64,000 nt of DNA from Oikopleura dioica (GCA_907165135.1 OU015567.1:2108001-2172000); one strand, 5' to 3'; shown: positions 1 through 11,962, counted from the stretch's first letter. Notes: generated by a model from the sequence alone, not told the origin. Program-made: numbers and translations.

Positions 1-2
1 AA

Positions 3-3000
3 ATCGAAGTCGTTACGACGAGTAGTCCACAATCAGAAGATGTCGATCCCATTATATTCGACAGCGGCAGTATATTTACGACAGCAAACTACTATTATGG
101 TGGTGAATCTGAAACTGTTGCTCCTATTGTCGAAGAACCAGAGCCCAACGAAACGACCTCAACGACAAGTACAACTAGAACATCGACAGCAACAACCACA
201 ACCACAGAAAAAACAACAACATCAACAACTTCTTCTGCTTCGACGACAACAACTCCAAAGAAAACAACCGCCTCAGTTATCGAAGAAATTGATGCGGACG
301 AGACAGAAGCTGAAGATACATTCAGTAGCTCAAGCTCATCCTCGATCTCATCATCCTCGGAATCATCGACAAGCGAAAGCTCTCAACCTTGCGAATGTTC
401 TGAAGAGTCTTCTTCTCCTTGTAGCTGCGTTTCTGAGTTCATTGAAGAACCAGACCCAGACCATTCGGCTCCGATTCTTGACTGTGATATCCTCAGTGGT
501 GAGCGATGTGCCCCTGAGACGACAACGGAGATTCCAGAAATCGAGACAACACCAGAAGACCTTGAAGCGACCACTGAAAGCTCTCCAGATTATTACACAG
601 CCACAGAAGTGATTTGTAACACAACTGAAATTGAGGAAATCGATGAAACCACAATGGAACTCGCTATCGAGACCACTCCCGAACCTCTGATCGAGACGAC
701 GACGAAAGAATCAGGTCCTGATTTCATTACAGTTCTCGATTGCAACACCACGGAATCTCCTGAGAATCCAGTTACAACACCGATGACAATTGAGACCACA
801 ATGGCAGAAATAATTGAAACCACCGTCGCGGAAATAGCCGAAACGACTCAACCAAAACTCGAAACTTCCTTCGTCACGGAGCTTGACTGCGACACAATTG
901 AGCCTACAGAAGCTCCTGACTGTAATTGTGAAGATGACGAGTGTCCAAATGTTTGTCCACCAGAGTGTGATAGTCCGCAGTGCGCACCGAAGCCAAACTG
1001 TGATAATTCTCCAAATTGTAATCCCGAGGATATTGAATCTACAACCGAGCCTGACAATGGTTTAACATTCGAACTGACAACTGCTGAGCCAGCTGGACCA
1101 TATGTAACTTACTTCGACAACCAAGGACCGCTTGTTACGACTGAAGGTCCTCCAGGTCCACCAGAAGAGCCAGAACTCTGCGTCGAGCCATGGTCGGAAT
1201 GGTCTCCCTGTGATTGTATTGAAGAAAGATCGATGCGATCAAGAGAGAGAATTTGTTTTTGTGAACTTTGTTTGGAAGATCTTTTCGAAGAAGAAATTTG
1301 CACTGAGCCTTGTGAGGTAGGAAAAGCCTCCAAAAATAAAAAAAGAAATTCATCAGTTTCAGGAAGCCAAGCCAACAACAGCAAGTCCAAAGCCAAGTAC
1401 GAGTGAGCCCAATCCAACCACTTCAAAATTAGAACCAATTAGAACAACTATTAGCATGGGAACGAGTATAACTACAAATCGCATGGAATTGCCCGTCAAT
1501 TCAGACTTACCTACCCTAGCAAAGTTAACCACTTCTCACACAATTAGCACCAGTACTGAAGACGATTCCACCACTCGGCAAAGTACCAACGTAAGTGCAA
1601 ATCGTTTACCGCGCTGATGACAGGTTCGGTTAGAGCTTGACATTCAACTTCTTTTTTTAGCACGAAACATGGACAGCCAATTCGAATGATGATTTATACG
1701 ATGCTTCGACTTGGCCGTCGTCCAGTCCTGAGACTGACGCCTTGTCCACAGTGACGGAATATTGGACAGAAAGTGGATTAACAAGTTCGCCCGACACGAC
1801 CTTTGCGCCCTTGATGGAGACAACGATGACTCACCTCGATGAGTTGGAAGCAACGACAAAAATAGCCACAACTCCAAGTCCAAGTTTTTCGCTGGAAACA
1901 ACCCAAAAGACGATATTGGAAAAGACTGATCGATGGTCAACGGAGGCAATCACAGATGATGAAGAGGATGATTGTAATTGCGATGATTTCGAAGCATCCG
2001 GAGATGACGAGTCTGGCTCTGGATACAAATCATGTTGTAAAATCAGTCCGACAATTTTACCTAGAGAGCCCATTATTGAAGAGTCGACTACTGAGTTGGA
2101 TGTTTTTGCAGAAACAACTGAAGGATTTCAAACTGAGTCTCCCTTCGTTGAAATAACGACTCAAGACATCAGTTTTACTACGCAATCTGCTTTAGAAACT
2201 TCACTGCCAAATGAATCTACAACTGAAGAATACATCACTGTTTGGGACTGCAATACAACTGAATCCGCCGACGATCAGACACCGTTTTCGGATGAAACAA
2301 CCGCATATTCTACAACTGAACTTGAGTTCAGTTCGGGTCAATCTATTGAGCAAACAACGATCCCAGTTCAAACAAGTTCCACCATTCAGCCCACTGGAAA
2401 CTGCGATGGGAAATGTGGAGAAGAAATTCCATTACCAAAGACGACGGAAATCCCTGATTGTCAGGAATGCGAAACAGAAGATGAAGACAGCGAACCAAAA
2501 ACGTCTTCCGCGGAAGTGACAACATCGATCACGACAACGGATTCTGATTGCAATTGTGATGAAGAAGAAAATTGCATCCATTCAAACTCATCATCATCTT
2601 CAACGTCATCTCAGAAAATATCAACTACAACAGTAACAACATCAACAACAACGCGTTCAACTAAGTCAGAATCAACAACATCGACATCAGCATCAACAAA
2701 ATCCCCGCTCACCGAAAAATCAAAAGACTGCGAATGTACTGAGAAACATGGATGCGACGCTGCTCCTGATAAAACATCAACATCAACTGTTCACTCAAAA
2801 GAGGAAACGTCGACAACAACCTCAACGAAGCAAATGTCAACAACGACATCAGCAACAATCTCAACTCCAAATATATCAGAAGACTGTGATTGCAAAAATA
2901 ATTCCGACTGCGAATGCCAACCCGTCACAACTACAGATTATATCGAGATTACAACGACTCCGACAGAAGAAAGTTCAACAACAACAACAACATCAACTAC

Positions 3001-6000
3001 AACATCATCAACTACAACATCATCAACTACAACAACATCAACAACAACCACAACAAAGCCTGAATTGATATCCATCCCTGGACGCCCAGACATCATTATT
3101 GGAAACAACAACAACGAGCAAGTCACAAGTGGATCCAATCTCATAAGTCCACCTCTTGAGCCAACTGCAAGCGCTCCCGAAGGTGTCGGAATCAAAAAGA
3201 TCCAAGCTTCCTGCTCCTGCCTGGCTCTGAATGAAAAATTCCTTGGCTGATACAAATACCAAATCTCATAAATTCGCTCCGGTTCATCCCAATGCAGCAA
3301 AATCGCAATACTAGTGCATGTTTTTACTAAAAACCAATTTCACCTTTTTCAGTCGATCAAACATTTTCTAAAGATACATTTAGCGTGCGACAAAGGCAAT
3401 TGGGAACCATGGGGTCCTTGTTCAACAACTTGTGGTGAAGAGGGAACTCGAACCCGTAAGAGACCATGCGGAAGCGGTTGTGACGCGGATAAAGAAGATG
3501 AAAGGCCGGAGGAAACTGGGCCTTGTGATGCAAGGTAAAAAAGACTCACTTAGCATAGGATACAAAAAATATTAGCGATTGCGCGCCCTGTCCTAAGAAA
3601 GAATGCGATTGCTCTGTTCCTGCTTGCGATCGGCCAAAGGTTGTTTTTTCTTTCTTTGTGAAAGAGATATTAATAGCTCTTAGGACTGCGAATGCCCCGA
3701 TGAGCTGAAAGAAATGTGTGCATGGACTGAATGGTCCGGCTTCTGCGGCTGCAGTGCATCCTGTGATGAAGGCATCCAAGCTCGAACGCGAAAATGCTTT
3801 TGTGGAGATGAGGAAGCCATCGGTTTGCCCCAGCCTGGTTGCGAAGGAGAACCCCAAGAGGAAGTTCCTTGTAATGAGGGACCATGTGACCCAACCGAAA
3901 ATTGCTTGGAAAATGGTCTTGTTTGCAGTCCAGGTAAACTTTTCCTTTCAACCCCGTTAATTTTTGGAAATTCGTCTCGAGAACTTGATATTACGCAACA
4001 GTTATCAAGAGAACGCACGTTCTTTTCGCGTTTTTCCTCACAAAAAAGAGCTCTCGAGAGTTCTAGACCAAGCATTTTTCATAATTCTGACATAAACCTT
4101 TCTTACAAAAATTTTCGTAATTATTTTTAATCGATGACTATACCCTTAAAGGTCAATGGTCTGATTTCGGCCCTTGCGATGCTCCTTGTGGCGAAACTAG
4201 ACAGCAAACTCGAGAACGATCTTGTGAATGTCCCGAAGGAATCCCAGCTGATCACGAAGAGTGTGGCTGTGGAGAAACCTCCGAGTGCAAAACTTGCCGT
4301 GGCGAATGCGACAATAATCCCGAACCCTGGACAAGTTGGTCTCCTTGTGAGTGCGAAATGGAGAACCCTGAGCGATCGCGCTTCCGAGAATGCGACAGTT
4401 GCGATGACTCTGTGCCTCTTGTTGAGACTGAGACCTGTCCACCGGTAAATAAATAATTCTGTCGTCTTGTCGATTTACTTTTAACCTATCAGGGCGAGTG
4501 TGTTCCTGAAATGAGTCTGGACGACTGCTTGGGCGATTGGGAAGATTGGGGACCATGCGATGCTGTTTGCGGCGTTGGTACTCGAACACGAGAACGTCCT
4601 TGCAAGTGTGGCCAACCAGGCTGCCCTGGTTGTGAGGAAACGAGCGAAGAAGAAGAATGTATCGGTGATCAAGAACCTTGCGAAGCCGGGCCTTGGTCGG
4701 AATTCGGCGAGTGTGATGCTAAATGCGACGAGCCTGGCCAGCAGTTCCGAAATAGAGAGTGCTTCTGTCCACCCGGAATCGACGAGGACCATCCCGATTG
4801 TGGATGTGAGAGCACTTCTGAATGTAAATCGTGCATTGGCAACTGCAACTGCCCAACAGAGTGGGAGCCATGGGGCCCCTGCGACGGTGTTTGTGACGGA
4901 TTTTAGAAAGACTGGGAATTAGATTTATTATAACTTCCCGGGTCTTTCTAAATCCGATTCTAGCGGATCGGGATACCGCGAGCGAGTGCGATACAACCCT
5001 TGCGACCCGAACCCAGATGCTCCTCCAGAAGTTCTTACTGAACCCTGTGCCGAAGAGCCAATTATGTGCGTTGCTTCTGAATGGAGCGAATTCGGCGAGT
5101 GCGATGCTGAGTGCGACGGATTTGGACAAATGACCAGAAGCAGAGAATGCGCTTGCCCAGAAGGAGCAGATGAGGATGATGAAGAATGCGGCTGTGGGTG
5201 AGTTTGAACCTGTTTTTCACTTTTTATTTTGTTGAATAGTGAACTGACCGAATGCAAATCTTGCCAAGGCAAGCCATGCAACTGCTGGGGCGAATGGGCT
5301 CCTTGGTCTCCATGTGACGGTCCATGTGGCGGTGGAGTTAGAACTCGAGAATCTCAAAACATTTGCGATGAAGGTGTCGAGCCAAAGATTGAGGAAGAAG
5401 AGTGCGAAGAAATCAGTAAGTTTCCATCATTTACGCATTAAATTCAGACGCTCTTTAGTTTGCACGCCTGGAGAATGGTCTGAATGGACTGAGTGCGATG
5501 CCGAGCCTGGCGAGTACGGTCAGAAATTCCGTGAGCGCGATTGCACTTGCCCACCTGGTGGCGACGAACTCAACCCCGATTGCGGCTGTGGAGATTTGAA
5601 AGAATGCTTGAGCTGCAAGGGTGAGTCACTTTGTGAATGGTCACCCTGGTCTGAGCCCAAAGCGCCATGCACTGCTACTTGTGGTGGCGGAACTCAACCA
5701 CGTGATCGAACTTGCAACGAAAGACCAAAGTCATTCGAGTCGCCAGAGGCCCCTCGACGAACCTGTGAAAAAATCCCCGATATTGAAGAAGGCTGCCCTG
5801 GTGCTTTTACTGAACAGACTCCCTGCTCATTTGATGCTTGTCCTCCAAAATGCGAATTTGGAGAATGGAGCTGCTGGTCTGAATGCAGTGCTACTTGCGG
5901 CGGTGGAAAAATGTCACGTGAACGACCATGCAACTGTCCCGAAGGAGTTCCAGAATCTGAATGCGAAAACAATGGGCAGTGCGATGGCGAGCCTATCGAA

Positions 6001-9000
6001 GGTTAAATTGAAAAAAAATGTTTCACTCTTTATTTTTTTAATTCTAGAGCAAGATTGCAATACAGATGTCACTTGCCCTCCTGACTGTGAATTTGGCGAC
6101 GACTGGGCCCCATGGGGTCCATGCACAACCACTTGCGGCCCTGGATCTCGTCAACGAGAGAAAGAATGTGACTGTAAGAGCTCAGACAGCTGCGACGGTT
6201 GCGAAGTACCCGAAGGATCCAATCCTGATGACTTCCTCGAGACTGGTGACTGCCCGAACGCTCCATGTACTTGCTGGGGAGACTGGGCTCCATGGAGCGA
6301 GTGCCCCAACAGTTGTGGAACTGACACTAGAACTCGAGAGCGACCTTGCATTTGCGAAGATGAGGACTGCAACGAAGAAGACAACATCGAGCAAGAACTC
6401 TGTCCTGGTGACTCTTGCATGTGGTCTTGCTGGTCCGAGTGGACCGAGTGTCTCGGCGGCGTGAACTCGTTGGAGGGACCTCCCTGTGGCGAGTCAACTA
6501 AGAAGAGAACTCGAACTTGCGACTGCCCACCTGGTGTCGATGAGTCCGAGTGCGGATGTGAAGGACCTTCGGAAGAAGAAGAACCTTGTGATCTTGGATC
6601 TTGCGAAGACCGTAAGTAAAACACTAGATAATATGCATGAGACCGAAATGAAATTGACTTTCATTTGCTCTTACTTACCATGACAATAGTCTGCTACACT
6701 CAATGGAGTCCGTGGTCGCCGTGCGGCGAGTGCGGCGGCCTTAGCACGCGCGAACGCGAATGCATGTGCGACGCCGAGTGGTGCCAGTTCACCACTACGG
6801 AGATGAACGAGTGCCCTGATTTTAAGTGCAAACCAGGCACGGGCTCACTTCACTTTATAAATAATAATGAACATATTATTTATAATCTCAAACATTCAAA
6901 AAGCCTCGTAAACAGGTCAGTGGTCTGACTGGTCACCTTGCACGGCCACGTGTGGTCCGCGGGCGATTATGACCAAAACCAGGGATTGCAATTGCCCCGA
7001 GGGCGCGAATCCCATCGCCTGCGGCTGTGACCAAGATCTGGTCAAAGAACGCAAATGCCCTAATGTTCCGGATGAATGTCCCCCAGGTGACATTTTTGAC
7101 TGCATGTTTTCGTAATCCTTGTTGATTTCAATTAACAGTCCATTTCATTATAATAACAAAACGATAAAAAACTTGTGGTTGAAAGAAAATTGATAAATAA
7201 AACTTCTCAATTTTTATTCAACAACAATGAGTTTGTAAGTATAACCTTTAGAGTGCACCGACTGGTGCAACTGGTCTGAGTGCGAGTGCAAGACCGGTCA
7301 GCAAACTCGTGTTCGAGAATGCGATGAGAATGTCTGCCAAGGCCGTGAAGAAACACCAGAGTGCCAGGAACGCGAGGATCGAACTTGCCCAGATGGATCT
7401 TGCGACAAGCCCAACTGCGGATGGACTGAATGGTGTTCTTGGTCCGATTGCGATGTGACATGCGGTAGTGGTGGAACACGCGTCCGCACTAGAAACTGCG
7501 ACTGCGAGGACGAGTGCAGCCAAGACGAGCGCGACGAGGGATGCCCAGGAGATGCCATTGAAGAGGAGCCTTGCGTCGAGGTAAAAAGACTACGACTAAA
7601 ATGGCCTTTTTGACACATAAACTTAAGGTTCCTCCCTGCGATTTCGGTAAGTTCACAGAACGCGAAGAACTGCGCCGCAGTTGCCGCGGTGCTCACTGCG
7701 CACGCAGCCCCTAATAGTCTCGCCACCAGCTCCCTAACTCGTCGCTCACCAATAAAAAAAATCGCGTAAAAGCTAAATTAACCCAGCACCAGAACATGAA
7801 TCAAAGATCAGAAATTTGAATTTCATTTTATGCACCGTCTGAATTTACCATCTCACTATCTCACTGTACTTCTATTAGTACGGATTATTCACACCGTCAC
7901 TGTAAATATCTTCTAACAAATTAGGATTCATCAATTTTTGTAAAACTGCATGCTCTCGAAGCTCAAATCTCAAGAATTGAGCTTCACTATCATCTCATAT
8001 CAGTATCTCATGTTTTACAATCATCACCCGAAGGATTTCATATCCTTATTCAAATTAATTCCTAACCAAAGAACAACCATCTGACGCCCCATAGTTTTCT
8101 CTAACCTGAGCTCATTTTCAGAAGGATCGGGTGGCAATCCGCCAGTCATCGGTGAGGGAACACCAAATCTCGGACCCACAGGAAGTGGTGACGGTAATTC
8201 GCCGCTACTTCGCTAATACTTTTCTTAGTCCAATAATTTTAATGCATGGCAACAAAAATAACTTATAATTTACCCAAAAATAGAGAGTAATATTGCTTAT
8301 GCGTTTGAAAACTGGACAAAAGTCATGACTCATGCTCATATCATTTGAACTCATGATCATGAACTCACTAATATCAATAGATGAAGACGTGTATAAACTG
8401 TATTCTCAGACTCAGGTGTGGATTCTGAATGTGGAGAAGACGAAGATTGTAATGGCGACAGTGAGTGTACTGGACCTGATTGCTCTGGCACCACCAATTA
8501 TGACGGCAATCCACCTCTAGGTACTACTAGCAATAATTTTTAACAGAAACAAACAAAAAATCTAAACAACTCAAAACTCAAAACTCAACTCCTAACAAAA
8601 GCATCATAAAACTGAAAAAACAACACGAAATAACGGCATGAATCAATCAACAACTGAAATCTACTGAAAACGACCATATCGCTACTGAAGAAAAGATCTT
8701 CAAAAGCAGCTAAATCGACCAACTAAACCAATAAACGAGAAAAATCCTTCTCAACTCACTTCTAAGAACCTGAGCCTGAGTGCGAAGAAACACTTGGCCC
8801 ATGGTGCGATTGGTCCGATTGCATGGAGTACGAAGATGACAATCCTTACTTTGAAGGACAGTGCTTCCAGTCGAGATCGAGAGAATGCCTCTGTGGAGAT
8901 TGCGCAGATGAGGAAGTCATTGAGACGGAACCCTGCCCTTGTCCAGATGATGATGCCCCTGAGTGTGAAAACGATGATTGTGCACCAGAAGGATCTGGAA

Positions 9001-11962
9001 GCGAACCGTGTCCAGATGACAATTGTCCTGAAGGCTCTGGAGAAGCTCCAGAAGAAGCCCCAGAAGACTGTGATGATGAAAAGGAAGCACCACCGGTTGA
9101 TGAGTGTCCCGAGGGATCTCCATGCAATGATAAAGAAGAGTGTCCAGAAGGATCTCCTTGCGATGAAAATGATGAGTGTCCAGAGGGATCTCCGTGCGAT
9201 GATGATGATGAAGCTCCGGAACTCCCATCAGGTGATGGCGGGGATGAAGAATGCGACGAAAACACTGGTTGTGATGAAGGCAGTGGAGCACCACCGATCA
9301 TCGATCTTGATACAACCCCTCTTCCTCCACCAACTACAACTTCGGCTGAAGAAACTGAGCCTCCCTGTGACAACAACGATAATGGAGGCTGCTCGTGGAA
9401 CGAATGGTGTGGTTGGTCAGAATGCGTCGGAGGTGGGCCACCTGATTGTTTCCGCGTAAGAGTTAGAACTTGCGATTGCCCAACGCCTTGCCCTGGAGAA
9501 GATATTGAGAAAGAGCCGTGTCCGTGCCCTGAATGCTCAAGTGATAATCCAGACAGGCCGCCTGATTGCGATGCTGACTGTACTCCGGGTCCAGCTACTG
9601 AAGTGACACCGGAAGACTTGACAACTCCTCAAATTCAAGAATACCTCTCCACTGTTCCACCAACCATGCTCACTACAGCTCCCCCAACCGACGATTTCGA
9701 CGGATCAGGAGACTGTGATGATGATGATTGTACGATGGAGGGATCAAGTGATATTCCTTGCAGAGATTGCCCTGATTGCGAAGGCTGTGTGCCCAGCAGT
9801 GGAGATGGAAGTGACAACGAATGTCCATCAACTCCTTGGGCTGAGTGGACAGAGTGCTCTTGCGAGAATAACCAGCGAGAGCGTTTCCGAGGATGTGTTG
9901 AAGATGGACTCTGCACTTGCCCGGATATTGTTGAGAGCGAGCCGTGCCCAGAGGAGGAGTTGACTGAGTGTACTTTTAATAGAAATAATTTTTCTCACGT
10001 TCTTATTTGTTTTTCAGGCACTTGCGAGTTTGACGAATGGTGTCCTTGGAGCGAATGTACAAAACCATGCAATGGGGGAACAATGACAAGATCTAGAAAT
10101 TGCCCTTGCGGTAATTGCGATGGAGACGCTTACGAAGTGCAAGATTGCAATACCCAGTGTTGTCGTAAGTTTGATGAGTTTTAATTCAATAGAGCAATAG
10201 AGAGCGATGCGCTTGTTAATTTTATTTTTCCATCAGTAACAGTGGCGCATTAAAAATACACAAAATTGCGAATTTTCTGTAAATTTATGGTTGTTTTTAT
10301 TGAAATTGTCTCAATCAATATTTTAGCGGATCTTCCAGAAGCCCCCGAAGATGGTCGCTACTGTTCTTCTCGAATCAACTACAGAACAAAAGAACCAGCT
10401 GTCTGTTGTGATGAGCGAAATGACGACTGTACTTTTGACATGGGCGATGGGGTGAGATAACTTGAAAAAAAACTAATCTCAAAAAAAAAATTCTAGCGTA
10501 AGTGCTTCTGTGACAACTATTGCGCTCGTGAAGAGTCCGACTGTTGCCCCGACTATGCCGAGACCTGCCTAGATATACCACCAACAGCTCTTCCACCTCC
10601 TGTCTACACAACTCGCGAGCCATGTAGGAATTCGACAACGAGTGAATCTATGTGTGACACGAACGCTTGAGATATTGACTTCCTTTTTTAATCCTCCAGT
10701 TGCTCTCGATTTTGAGAGATTCTGACGGATTAAAATAGGATCACTTTTGTGTGCTTTTGTGTGATAACGACTTGAAATTTGCGGTAAGATAATTTACAAT
10801 TACAAAAAGAAACCATTGATCCGTTTAACCCCGCAATTTTGAATGCATGACCTTGATTTTAACTATTTTGAAAACATTTTTCAAAATGTGTCTTCCATGA
10901 TCTCAAACCATTTATAAATCCAAATCATTTTTAGCTCTTGACCTCGATTCCCCTACCGGCCCCTGTTACGATTCAACAGGCACGCGCATTGTGCCTATCT
11001 CTACTGAAACCCGCGAAAACTGCAACTCCTGCCGTTGCCGCTTGCAACCAGACGGTTCGCTCCGCTTCTCCTGCGATACCAACATCTGCCTCATCGATCC
11101 TGAACTGATTGCAACCGTCAACGCTGCTGACCGCCAAGACGCAACTTCTTGGACGGCTGGCAATTACTCTTTCTTTTGGGGAAAGACCTTGAACCATGGA
11201 TATCGCAATTATCTTGGAACAGCGCCCCCAAGCGACTTTGCCGAAGCTTGCGAGACTCTCGAAGTTACCGAGCTTCCATCTTCTTTCGACTTTACTTCTC
11301 CAGCTGATCACGTGATCCCTCAAAACCTCCACCAAGAAGACTGCGGCGCATCATTTGCTTTCTCATTCTTCAATCTCGTGAATTTCAAACTCTTATCGAC
11401 GAATCAGCGCGCTTTCCACGGCGATGTTCTCGAGGTCTTAAAATCTTGTGGAAATGGCTGCATTCCTGGTGATGTTCTCGACATTCATCATGCTGCCAAG
11501 ACTGGTTTCTGGCCTGATTCCGACGGAAGCAACGTCTGCCCGATGTTCGATTCCTGTGTCCGAGTTTCGGGTGCAAAACGACTCGCCTGCGTTGACGACA
11601 TCAAACGTGAGGTCCTCACCGTTGGCCCCGTCATTGCGTACTTGAACGTGTCCCGCGACTTCTTCGTCTACCAGGATGGAATCTACTCGCCAACAGTTCA
11701 AACACCCGCCACTCAAACTAATAGCCAACTCCACAGTGTGGTCCTCGTTGGCTGGGGCGAGGGATACTGGCTCGCGCGCAACTCCTGGGGTGACGACTCA
11801 CGTGACAACGAGAGCGCCTGGGGCATGTGTCTCAACGATGGCGGGCGCGAGCGATGCGGCTTTGTCAAACTCGCCAGTGGCATCATCGATTCTAGTTACG
11901 TCGTGACAATTCCAGTGGATACAAGCGATTGCGATCACTCTGGAGAATACAACGAGTCGTAA
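3..11962 (+). CDS. Giant multi-exon extracellular protein, 5'-partial: Thr/Ser/Glu mucin-like tracts, ~24 TSP1-like repeats, C-terminal SMB + TINAG-like inactive papain domain
   Basis: Frame is open from nt 3 to the donor at 1317. Successive exons join in phase by short introns (e.g. 1317-1362, 1591-1660, 3183-3383, 9970-10017, 10165-10326, 10624-10934). Repeated WxxWxxC...CG.G...R.R motifs. Terminal exon 10935-11962 has papain motifs and ends at TAA 11962. Confidence 0.85.
10327..11962 (+). other. TINAG/TINAGL1-like module (somatomedin-B-like Cys domain + cathepsin-B-like pseudoprotease) at the end of the large gene
   Basis: CC.ERNDDC...KCFCDNYC...SDCCPDY..TC; ENCNSCRC...CDTNICL.DP; W.AGNYSFFWGKTL; QEDCGASFAFS (catalytic Cys replaced by Ser, codon 11351-11353); HSVVLVGWG; WLARNSWG. 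Confidence 0.9.

What the first reader, a model, noticed from the sequence alone, without database searches (positions are those of the whole stretch)
3..11962. Giant mucin-TSP1 array fused in frame to a TINAG-like pseudoprotease
Seen: about 24 TSP1-like repeats and long Thr/Ser tracts splice in phase (intron 10165-10326, CC-P|DLPE) into an SMB domain plus a papain fold with catalytic Cys replaced by Ser. Known: vertebrate TINAG/TINAGL1 are ~470-aa matrix proteins with only SMB plus the dead protease domain. Inference: a roughly 3000-aa-scale fibrous scaffold with a matrix-binding tip, possibly a house or basement-membrane structural protein with an undescribed architecture.
Basis: partly seen in the sequence, partly recalled or inferred. 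Interest (0 to 1): 0.75.

Follow-up and report, generated by a model that had tools for sequence, protein, structure and literature searches.

The report
Giant mucin-TSR protein ending in TINAG
In the tunicate Oikopleura dioica the only copy of the basement-membrane protein TINAG (a dead cathepsin-B-like protease) has no start of its own and is spliced onto the end of a thrombospondin-repeat protein, which is probably one mucin-like gene of about 3,400 amino acids.

Summary
The window holds about 1,100 aa of Thr/Ser/Pro-rich sequence and 24 TSP1-like repeats. These are followed by a TINAG-type SMB domain and a papain-fold domain with Ser in place of the catalytic Cys; His and Asn are kept.

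The key claim, in-frame splicing across 10165-10326, is now supported by evidence from outside the window:
- **Orthologous contig.** In a contig from another O. dioica lineage the same interval is a 48-nt GTAAGT...AG phase-1 intron. It carries an in-frame stop and no ATG, so the TINAG part has no room for its own start.
- **Public gene models.** Two Norwegian models (CBY23416.1 = UniProt E4X1U9, and CBY39206.1) already join ...CC-P-DLPE....
- **Transcript-like ORF.** An ORF from a third lineage reads without interruption across all three junctions of the TINAG part.

The gene starts about 2 kb upstream of the window, with a signal-peptide exon and 4 more TSRs. My curated model has 30 exons and about 3,440 aa. 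Continuity of the whole array is inferred, not shown; the weakest junction lies at 7580-8122.

No TSP1+TINAG architecture appeared among the 150 closest representative relatives or in the papers searched. A role in the house is untested. Verdict: a new architectural variant of the TINAG family, partly visible in unnamed public models. Interest is moderate.

The parts
1..1316 (+). Window part of a 1,561-nt exon that begins at -244. It encodes an acidic Tyr-rich stretch, a Thr/Ser/Pro-rich (mucin-like) region and one degenerate TSR near 1188-1265.
   Evidence: The frame is open from L004:9751 into the window. Composition is given and the TSR hit. The exon has no Met or signal peptide of its own.
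1363..1590 (+). Thr/Ser/Pro-rich exon (51% T+S+P).
   Evidence: Coding-score map and exon chain; composition.
1661..3182 (+). Main mucin-like exon (44% T+S+P, Thr/Ser run of 28 residues). Its Thr run at 2976-3056 is encoded by an ACA/CAA microsatellite.
   Evidence: Pfam finds nothing here.
3384..7580 (+). TSR array. My model has 12 exons: 3384-3534, 3576-3642, 3684-3933, 4152-4444, 4493-4888, 4923-5197, 5240-5415, 5459-6001, 6048-6611, 6690-6836, 6916-7086 and 7252-7580. Together they carry 19 TSP1-like units.
   Evidence: Pfam TSP_1 and the self-built HMM. Exon chain. Norwegian model P0159 confirms the splice 7086/7252. Some boundaries are approximate, in particular 4888/4923.
6837..6915 (+). 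Probable non-canonical GC-AG intron (79 nt, phase 1).
   Evidence: No canonical GT donor is available in the required phase. This choice keeps the best-scoring TSR (6912-7007, E 5e-17) intact.
7628..7646 (+). Putative 19-nt micro-exon with a GTAAGT donor. It is the weakest link of the model.
   Evidence: It is needed to pass from the phase-0 donor at 7581 to the phase-1 acceptor at 8121. The Norwegian model bridges this gap in a different way.
8122..8193 (+). Small Gly/Ser/Pro linker exon (EGSGGNPPVIGEG...).
   Evidence: 77% identical to residues 159-189 of the Norwegian model P0159. Phase 1 on both sides.
8410..8520 (+). Small acidic Cys-containing linker exon.
   Evidence: 70% identical to P0159 residues 192-231. 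Phase 1 on both sides.
8767..9969 (+). Acidic, Cys- and Pro-rich exon (30% Asp+Glu, 12% Cys). It holds 3 degenerate TSRs and a 36-nt tandem repeat (9098-9211) that encodes CPEGSPC units.
   Evidence: Orthologues at 71-91% identity: P0157, P0158, P0159 and L008.
10018..10164 (+). Last TSR exon. It ends ...CNTQCC plus one base (phase 1).
   Evidence: Pfam TSP_1 and self-HMM E 6e-14. Against L008, 24 of 30 mismatches fall at third codon positions.
10165..10326 (+). Junction intron (162 nt, GTAAGT...TTTTAG, phase 1). It contains the stop at 10182-10184 and a chance in-frame ATG at 10287.
   Evidence: The orthologous interval in L008 is a 48-nt GT-AG intron without an ATG. Nothing aligns beyond GTAAGTT. 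It is spliced out in P0163, P0162 and P0165.
10327..10451 (+). First half of the TINAG-type SMB domain (P-DLPEAPEDGRYC...).
   Evidence: Aligns to residues 42-62 of spider TINAG-like P0003. Against L008, 23 of 26 mismatches fall at third codon positions.
10497..10623 (+). Second half of the SMB domain plus a Pro-rich linker. The donor is 10623|GTAGGA.
   Evidence: Pfam Somatomedin_B at 21.5 bits. Aligns to P0003 residues 70-105. The donor position is fixed by P0163 and P0165, which read ...TTREP-S-....
10676..10743 (.). Conserved hairpin inside intron 10624-10934. This is a side observation and is not shown to belong to the gene's function.
   Evidence: Folding z-scores are -4.8 (+) and -6.6 (-) in the window, and -4.9 and -6.9 in L008. 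The flanks 10624-10700 and 10751-10805 are 84-87% identical between lineages, against 74-80% for the exons. Rfam gives nothing significant.
10935..11962 (+). Last exon: Cys-rich linker (NCNxCxC...), then the cathepsin-B-like pseudoprotease domain and the stop at 11960-11962. Ser replaces the catalytic Cys at 11351-11353; His is at 11732-11734 and Asn at 11780-11782.
   Evidence: Peptidase_C1 E 2e-16. 32% identity to spider TINAG-like over 309 residues; alignment. The PDB sequence search hits cathepsins. A model of the orthologous spliced module matches procathepsin B. The exon is single copy in the genome.

Best explanation
This is most likely one large gene for a secreted extracellular-matrix glycoprotein of the tunicate Oikopleura dioica.

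**Extent and layout.** The gene runs from about 2 kb upstream of the window to the stop at 11960-11962. My model has about 30 exons and about 3,440 aa. In order, the protein has:
1. a signal peptide and 4 thrombospondin type 1 repeats (TSRs), all upstream of the window;
2. a mucin-like spacer of about 1,100 aa, rich in Thr, Ser and Pro;
3. about 20 TSRs;
4. acidic Cys-rich linkers with a few degenerate TSRs;
5. one last TSR;
6. a complete TINAG module: a 10-Cys SMB domain, a Cys-rich linker and a cathepsin-B-like domain whose catalytic Cys is Ser.

**What is shown.** The TINAG module has no start or signal peptide of its own. It is joined to the last TSR exon by ordinary cis-splicing of a phase-1 intron, which is 162 nt here and 48 nt in an Atlantic lineage.

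**What is inferred.**
- All upstream exons belong to the same transcript.
- The fusion arose by exon shuffling. The signal-peptide exon of an ancestral TINAG gene of about 450 aa was replaced by a TSR array whose modules are bounded mostly by phase-1 introns (17 of 29 introns in my model).
- The protein acts without catalysis. From my own knowledge of vertebrate TINAG/TINAGL1, which bind laminin, collagen IV and integrins, the dead protease tip would serve as a matrix- or integrin-binding end. The glycosylated TSR and mucin parts would form a long extended tether.
For: **Domains.**

**Splice geometry.**

**Orthologous contig L008.** It is identical to Norwegian protein P0159 in the overlapping part.
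- It has a 48-nt GTAAGT...AG phase-1 intron at the junction. The intron contains an in-frame TGA and no ATG, and the split codon again reads Pro.
- In the flanking exons 23-27 of 26-33 mismatches fall at third codon positions, while the introns do not align.

**Database proteins.**
- Public models CBY23416.1/E4X1U9 (786 aa) and CBY39206.1 read ...CNTECC-P-DLPEAPEDGKYC....
- Logan ORF P0165 (445 aa, on a 1,998-nt contig, third lineage) is uninterrupted over all three junctions.
- P0159 bridges 6983-9500.

**Gene model.**
- A stop-free chain of 3,443 codons exists with GT-AG introns, one of them GC-AG.
- The internal exons lack an ATG or signal peptide. The only convincing start exon is L004:8000-8057.

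**Copy number.** The C1 exon is single copy in the genome.
Against:
- Continuity upstream of about 6983 rests only on frames, phases and the lack of alternative starts.
- The step from the phase-0 donor at 7581 to the phase-1 acceptor at 8121 needs an unproven 19-nt micro-exon.
- The public Norwegian models are fragmented rather than giant.
- P0165 begins at an internal Met, so it says nothing about upstream exons and could reflect a shorter transcript.
- In this lineage an in-frame ATG at 10287 encodes a weakly signal-peptide-like MVVFIEIVSINILA just before the SMB exon.
- The function is wholly inferred.
Confidence: 0.7

Rival explanations
1. There are two adjacent genes. A TSR/mucin gene ends at the TAA at 10182. 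An independent TINAG-like gene starts at the ATG at 10287, using MVVFIEIVSINILA as its signal peptide, possibly as the downstream gene of an operon.
For: - A stop lies 18 nt after the donor.
- The ATG at 10287 is in frame and has a hydrophobic 14-mer with a Kyte-Doolittle mean of 2.7.
- An ATTAAA and an acceptor-like CAG lie between the stop and the ATG.
- Canonical TINAG proteins are about 450 aa and have their own signal peptide.
Against: - In lineage L008 the whole interval is a 48-nt intron without an ATG. The first downstream Met lies inside the SMB domain, so no secreted product could start there.
- The tail after the donor (RKFDEF* here, RKLTSNLQI* in L008) and the ATG region are not conserved, whereas both flanking exons are under purifying selection.
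- Three database proteins are spliced across the junction.
- The candidate signal peptide has an acidic residue in its core and no basic N-region.
Confidence: 0.05
2. The TINAG module is fused to TSRs, but the array is more than one gene. The TINAG-bearing protein would then be much shorter, about 1,000-1,300 aa, starting somewhere in the low-coding gaps 7581-8766 or further upstream. The mucin part would belong to a separate gene.
For: - There are long stretches with little or no coding signal at 7581-8766, 3183-3383 and -641..-245.
- The phase mismatch at 7580/8122 needs a micro-exon.
- The public models are split: CBY23416.1 starts at an internal Met, and CBY39828.1 is partial.
- The word search with the mucin exon found nothing that bridges the gaps.
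Against: - Norwegian model P0159 runs from the exon at 6983 across the 7581-8766 gap into the exon at 8767.
- No intron holds an ATG with a signal-peptide-like peptide in a usable frame, other than the one at 10287.
- The exons after each gap lack start codons.
- All exons lie on one strand at uniform density, and a stop-free chain exists.
Confidence: 0.2
3. Both forms are made. The locus produces the giant fusion and also a short TINAG-only or last-TSR+TINAG isoform, from an internal promoter or an SL trans-splice site. The short form would restore a canonical-size TINAG.
For: - P0165 starts at a Met inside the last TSR exon, although its contig has about 500 further bases.
- The lineage-specific ATG at 10287.
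- From my own knowledge, O. dioica uses SL trans-splicing widely.
Against: - A product starting at the Met of the last TSR exon would lack a signal peptide, yet it carries about 30 Cys that need the secretory pathway.
- No such start is possible in L008.
- There is no direct evidence for any 5' end.
Confidence: 0.1

Closest known systems
TINAG / TINAGL1 (tubulointerstitial nephritis antigen family; non-peptidase homologues of cathepsin B). Arthropod 'SMB domain-containing' and TINAG-like proteins such as P0003 and P0005 belong here, and from my own knowledge so does Drosophila Swim.
   Same: - The same colinear module: a 10-Cys SMB domain, an NCNxCxC Cys-rich linker, the NYSFFWGKTL motif, and a cathepsin-B-like domain reading CGAS(W/F)AF, with Ser for the catalytic Cys and His and Asn kept.
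- The nearest ESM Atlas clusters are all TINAG or TINAG-like.
- A model of the orthologous module matches procathepsin B.
   Different: - It has no signal peptide of its own; the module is the C-terminal 12% of a protein of about 3,440 aa.
- Identity is only 29-32%.
- The protease domain has deletions and an extra Cys-containing insert (WG.C..DG...CG) near the C-terminus.
- Known family members are 400-480 aa.
Public O. dioica gene models CBY23416.1 (UniProt E4X1U9, 'SMB domain-containing protein', 786 aa) and CBY39206.1 (partial)
   Same: They are orthologues at 77-79% identity and carry the same TSR-to-SMB splice junction, CC-P-DLPE.
   Different: - They come from a different cryptic lineage.
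- The models are truncated: CBY23416.1 starts at an internal Met of the exon at 8767 and skips the acidic repeats.
- They carry no functional name and appear in none of the papers searched.
- Pfam sees only Peptidase_C1 and a sub-threshold TSP_1 in CBY23416.1.
Large TSR-array matrix proteins (SCO-spondin, hemicentin, papilin/ADAMTSL, THSD7). This comparison is from my own knowledge.
   Same: Long tandem arrays of TSP1 repeats with WxxW and CSxTCG motifs, in secreted matrix proteins built from phase-1 modules.
   Different: None of them is known to end in an SMB plus dead-cathepsin module, and the domains that define those families were not found here by Pfam.
Mucins and oikosins (house proteins of Oikopleura)
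   Same: It has a long Thr/Ser/Pro-rich region. Some oikosins carry TSP1 repeats; oik23 is one example (PMC3390340).
   Different: - No VWD, CysD or cystine-knot domains were found.
- There is no tandem repeat structure in the PTS region apart from a short microsatellite.
- The house-proteome paper mentions no somatomedin, peptidase or cathepsin protein.

Membership tests
TINAG/TINAGL1 family | N-terminal SMB-type Cys-rich domain (10 Cys in TINAG proteins) | tested here: met
   The domain is split over two exons. Pfam SMB scores 21.5 bits on the second half alone, against a cut-off of 23.1. BLASTP aligns the halves colinearly to P0003 residues 42-62 and 70-105. All 10 Cys align.
TINAG/TINAGL1 family | Cathepsin-B-like Peptidase_C1 domain | tested here: met
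   Pfam PF00112 at E 2e-16. The PDB sequence search hits cathepsins. Foldseek matches the orthologous module to procathepsin B at E 5e-13.
TINAG/TINAGL1 family | Catalytic Cys replaced by Ser, with His and Asn retained | tested here: met
   The motif reads CGASFAF, with Ser at 11351-11353. HSV is at 11732 and NSWG at 11780. The same is seen in all Oikopleura orthologues and in arthropod TINAG-like proteins.
TINAG/TINAGL1 family | Cys-rich linker (NCNxCxC...C..N.C) and the NYSxFWGKTL motif between the SMB and protease domains | tested here: met
   Alignments.
TINAG/TINAGL1 family | Stand-alone secreted protein of about 400-480 aa with its own signal peptide directly before the SMB domain | tested here: not met
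   The SMB exon is spliced to a TSR exon. Relatives are 400-480 aa. This is an architectural difference; homology of the module itself is not in doubt.
TINAG/TINAGL1 family | Binding to laminin, collagen IV or integrins; location in basement membrane | not testable with these tools
   Needs protein biochemistry or in situ data.
Thrombospondin type 1 repeat (TSR) proteins | Repeats with the WxxW, CSxTCG and RxR layers and 6 Cys that match Pfam TSP_1 | tested here: met
   TSP_1 scores at or above its gathering cut-off on 10 of the open stretches tested. The self-built HMM finds 28 units. The model contains 24 WxxW motifs. Several units are degenerate, with E values of 0.01-0.8.
Gel-forming mucins | PTS domain flanked by VWD, CysD and cystine-knot domains | tested here: not met
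   PTS-like composition is present, but Pfam finds no VWD, CysD or CTCK domain. The region is mucin-like only in composition.
Oikosins (house structural proteins) | Detected in the house proteome and expressed in the oikoplastic epithelium | tested here: inconclusive
   The main text of PMC3390340 mentions no somatomedin, peptidase, cathepsin or TINAG protein. The single-cell preprint mentions none of these terms either. Supplementary gene lists were not checked against this locus.

The most novel reading that the evidence does not exclude
The ancestral basement-membrane protein TINAG no longer exists as a free protein in Oikopleura. It survives only as the C-terminal tip of a giant mucin/TSR tether. 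That tether would be made by the oikoplastic epithelium and would anchor the secreted house (or its rudiment) to the epithelial surface. If so, an old matricellular adaptor was captured by exon shuffling for the larvacean-specific house.
Probability: 0.12. Interest if true: 0.7.

Novelty: new variant of a known kind. Interest (0 to 1): 0.45.

Why it matters
TINAG/TINAGL1 proteins are small matricellular adaptors whose dead protease domain is poorly understood. Here the only TINAG copy of a chordate is a terminal module of a giant glycoprotein, which amounts to a natural experiment: it suggests that the module works as a portable binding tip and does not need to be free.

The locus is also a clean example of a signal-peptide exon being replaced through phase-1 exon shuffling in a fast-evolving, compact genome.

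In practical terms, the public O. dioica gene models for this locus found here are fragments and could be merged and named.

Tried and rejected
- **The look-up of encoding contigs.** I tried it on P0001 and P0002 to get their contigs. As a result the contig behind the transcript-like ORF P0165 could not be read.
- **Word search with the C1 exon.** It found only single-exon ORFs and arthropod TINAG-like proteins, because the length limit hid the 786-aa model. That model surfaced only through the cluster look-up.
- **Exhaustive search with the C1 exon.** There was no long relative with a C-terminal C1 domain plus TSRs. The 37 longer hits I scanned carry no TSP_1.
- **Word search with the mucin exon.** Nothing was found; low-complexity candidates swamped the search.
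- **My exon-chain program.** It is crude. It invented an intron inside the C1 exon, chose the wrong acceptor at 10503, and cut a good TSR at 6912. I corrected these by hand from the orthologous proteins and with a GC-AG intron.
- **A coding exon inside intron 10624-10934.** I considered this because of the high conservation and rejected it. The indels between lineages are not multiples of three, and the mismatches show no codon periodicity.
- **Rfam on that intron.** Nothing significant.
- **The joined spliced model.** It was never sent to any search or folding tool. It was used only inside local scripts to check frame, length and motif counts. For the spliced TINAG module I used the natural database proteins P0163 and P0165 instead.

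Full report
**What the window is.** The window is G000:C5:2108001-2172000. That fits my results: the exons here are 71-91% identical to proteins that NCBI labels Oikopleura dioica and to marine metagenome ORFs. The sequence is not human.

**Checking the observation.**
- Stop-to-stop translation and a codon-bias map show one densely coding + strand locus broken by short introns.
- Pfam finds TSP_1-type domains on most open stretches between 3272 and 10181. It also finds a Somatomedin_B half-domain at 10497-10667 and Peptidase_C1 (E 2e-16) on the last exon.
- An HMM built from the repeats themselves counts 24 TSR units in the window and 4 upstream.
- The exons covering -244..3182 are 37-51% Thr+Ser+Pro, with runs of up to 28 Thr/Ser.
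- The proposed intron is exactly as described: donor GTAAGT at 10165, acceptor TTTTAG ending at 10326, phase 1 on both sides, and a split codon C|CG that reads Pro.
- The protease motif reads CGASFAF, with Ser at 11351-11353 where papain has the catalytic Cys. His (11732) and Asn (11780) are kept, as in arthropod TINAG-like proteins.
- The three C-terminal exons align colinearly to residues 42-62, 70-105 and 124-419 of a spider TINAG-like protein.

**The rival at the junction.** Within this window alone the fusion is not proven.
- The TSR frame reaches a TAA only 18 nt after the donor.
- An in-frame ATG at 10287 would encode MVVFIEIVSINILA directly before the SMB exon. That peptide is weakly signal-peptide-like.
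- O. dioica also has operons and SL trans-splicing (my own knowledge).

Two adjacent genes was therefore a serious alternative.

**Evidence that decides it.** A scan of JGI metagenome contigs with the C1 exon returned L008 (2,155 bp). In the overlapping part L008 is identical to the Norwegian O. dioica protein CBY39828.1 (P0159), and it covers the last TSR exons, both SMB exons and the start of the C1 exon.
- In L008 the interval between ...CNTECC and DLPEAPEDGKYC is a 48-nt intron, GTAAGT...AAAG. It is phase 1 on both sides, the split codon again reads Pro, and it contains an in-frame TGA and no ATG. Nothing there could start a secreted TINAG protein, because the next Met lies inside the SMB domain.
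- The alignment of the window to L008 shows mismatches concentrated at third codon positions in the last TSR exon (24 of 30) and in the SMB exons (23 of 26 and 27 of 33).
- The introns, by contrast, differ in length and barely align. The tail after the donor is not conserved.

The cluster look-up for the C1 ORF then revealed three spliced proteins:
1. CBY23416.1 (UniProt E4X1U9, 786 aa, 'SMB domain-containing protein').
2. CBY39206.1 (partial).
3. P0165, a Logan ORF of 445 aa on a 1,998-nt contig from a third lineage.

All three read ...CC-P-DLPE..., ...GDG-RKCFC... and ...TTREP-S-... without interruption. These junctions fix the donor of the second SMB exon at 10623. The fusion of the TINAG module to at least the last TSRs is thus real and conserved across lineages.

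**Extent of the gene.** The open frame at base 3 continues upstream.
- The upstream 2 kb holds four more TSR exons.
- It also holds the only convincing first exon: ATG at L004:8000, peptide MKKIDLKDRISILTVIACM, GTAAGT donor, phase 1.
- An exon-chain program plus hand curation gives 30 exons and 3,443 codons without a stop. 17 of the 29 introns are phase 1.
- One intron (6837-6915) has to be GC-AG to keep the best-scoring TSR intact.
- Exons after the larger gaps have no ATG or signal peptide, and the only in-frame intronic ATG is the one at 10287.
- Norwegian model P0159 runs from the exon at 6983 across the low-coding gap 7581-8766 into the exon at 8767. Its small linker exons are 70-77% identical to 8122-8193 and 8410-8520.

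Two weak points remain. Continuity upstream of about 6983 is inferred only. The step from the phase-0 donor at 7581 to the phase-1 acceptor at 8121 needs an unproven 19-nt micro-exon.

The joined spliced model was used only in local scripts for frame and length. It was not sent to any search or fold tool; searches were done exon by exon by reference or with natural database proteins.

**What it is and how it probably works.**
- The C-terminal module belongs to the TINAG/TINAGL1 family by every sequence feature tested (see the membership table).
- It is the only such gene in this genome.
- A model of the orthologous spliced module (P0165; mean pLDDT 76) matches procathepsin B structures.
- With Ser at the nucleophile position it is very probably non-catalytic.
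- The upstream part is a secreted array of TSRs, a mucin-like spacer and acidic Cys-rich linkers.

I infer a long, glycosylated matrix tether with a TINAG binding tip. I also infer that it arose when the signal-peptide exon of a TINAG gene was replaced by a TSR array through phase-1 exon shuffling. The tissue and the binding partners are unknown. The house-proteome paper and a recent single-cell preprint do not mention such a protein.

**Novelty.**
- The exhaustive search lists the 150 best representative relatives of the C1 exon. None combines a C-terminal C1 domain with TSRs, and the 37 longer ones I scanned carry no TSP_1.
- The nearest ESM Atlas clusters are TINAG-like families of 400-480 aa.
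- No paper mentions the public accessions, and a search combining TINAG, TSR and SMB terms returned nothing relevant by title.
- The junction is nevertheless already present in unnamed, truncated public models from 2010-era annotation.

I therefore rate it a new variant of a known kind with moderate interest, not a categorically new system.

Noticed in passing
window 10624-10934 (hairpin 10676-10743); L008 1690-1980: The last intron holds stretches that are more conserved between lineages (84-87%) than the flanking exons (74-80%), with no codon periodicity. It also holds a stable hairpin in both lineages (z -4.8 to -6.9, stronger on the minus strand). The inner stem differs in sequence between lineages but still pairs. 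It may be an intronic miRNA precursor or a regulatory element. Rfam gives only a weak mir-7973 hit (E 0.24).
   Followed up: partly
window 6837-6915: A GC-AG (non-canonical) phase-1 intron is needed to keep the best-scoring TSR intact. No GT donor is available in the right phase.
   Followed up: partly
window 4888-4964: The TSR at 4856 is split by an intron whose exact borders are unclear. The canonical GT-AG choice (4889-4922) leaves a 14-aa insert in the repeat. The borders that would give a clean repeat have no canonical donor.
   Followed up: partly
window 9098-9211: A 36-nt tandem repeat (3.2 copies, 83% match) encodes acidic CPEGSPC units. The Norwegian orthologues have a different number and sequence of these units, so the linker evolves quickly.
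   Followed up: partly
window 10165-10326 versus L008 1337-1384: The junction intron is 162 nt in this lineage and 48 nt in the Atlantic lineage. The extra sequence creates a chance in-frame ATG with a hydrophobic peptide that mimics a separate gene start.
   Followed up: yes
proteins P0007, P0008 (marine metagenome ORFs, 334-336 aa): These are single-exon TINAG-like ORFs, 36-37% identical to the C1 exon. They share the Oikopleura-specific Cys-containing insert near the C-terminus (WG.C..DG..CG), so they probably come from other appendicularians. Their upstream context could not be read.
   Followed up: no
public models CBY23416.1, CBY39206.1, CBY39828.1: The Norwegian O. dioica models found for this locus are fragments. 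One starts at an internal Met and skips the acidic repeat region, and two are partial models on small allelic scaffolds.
   Followed up: partly
L004 1282-3357 and 3600-7300 (upstream of the window): An aquaporin-like gene and transposon-like ORFs lie upstream of the gene start. About 4.6 kb of repeat-like sequence lies between the aquaporin gene and the TSR gene's first exon.
   Followed up: no
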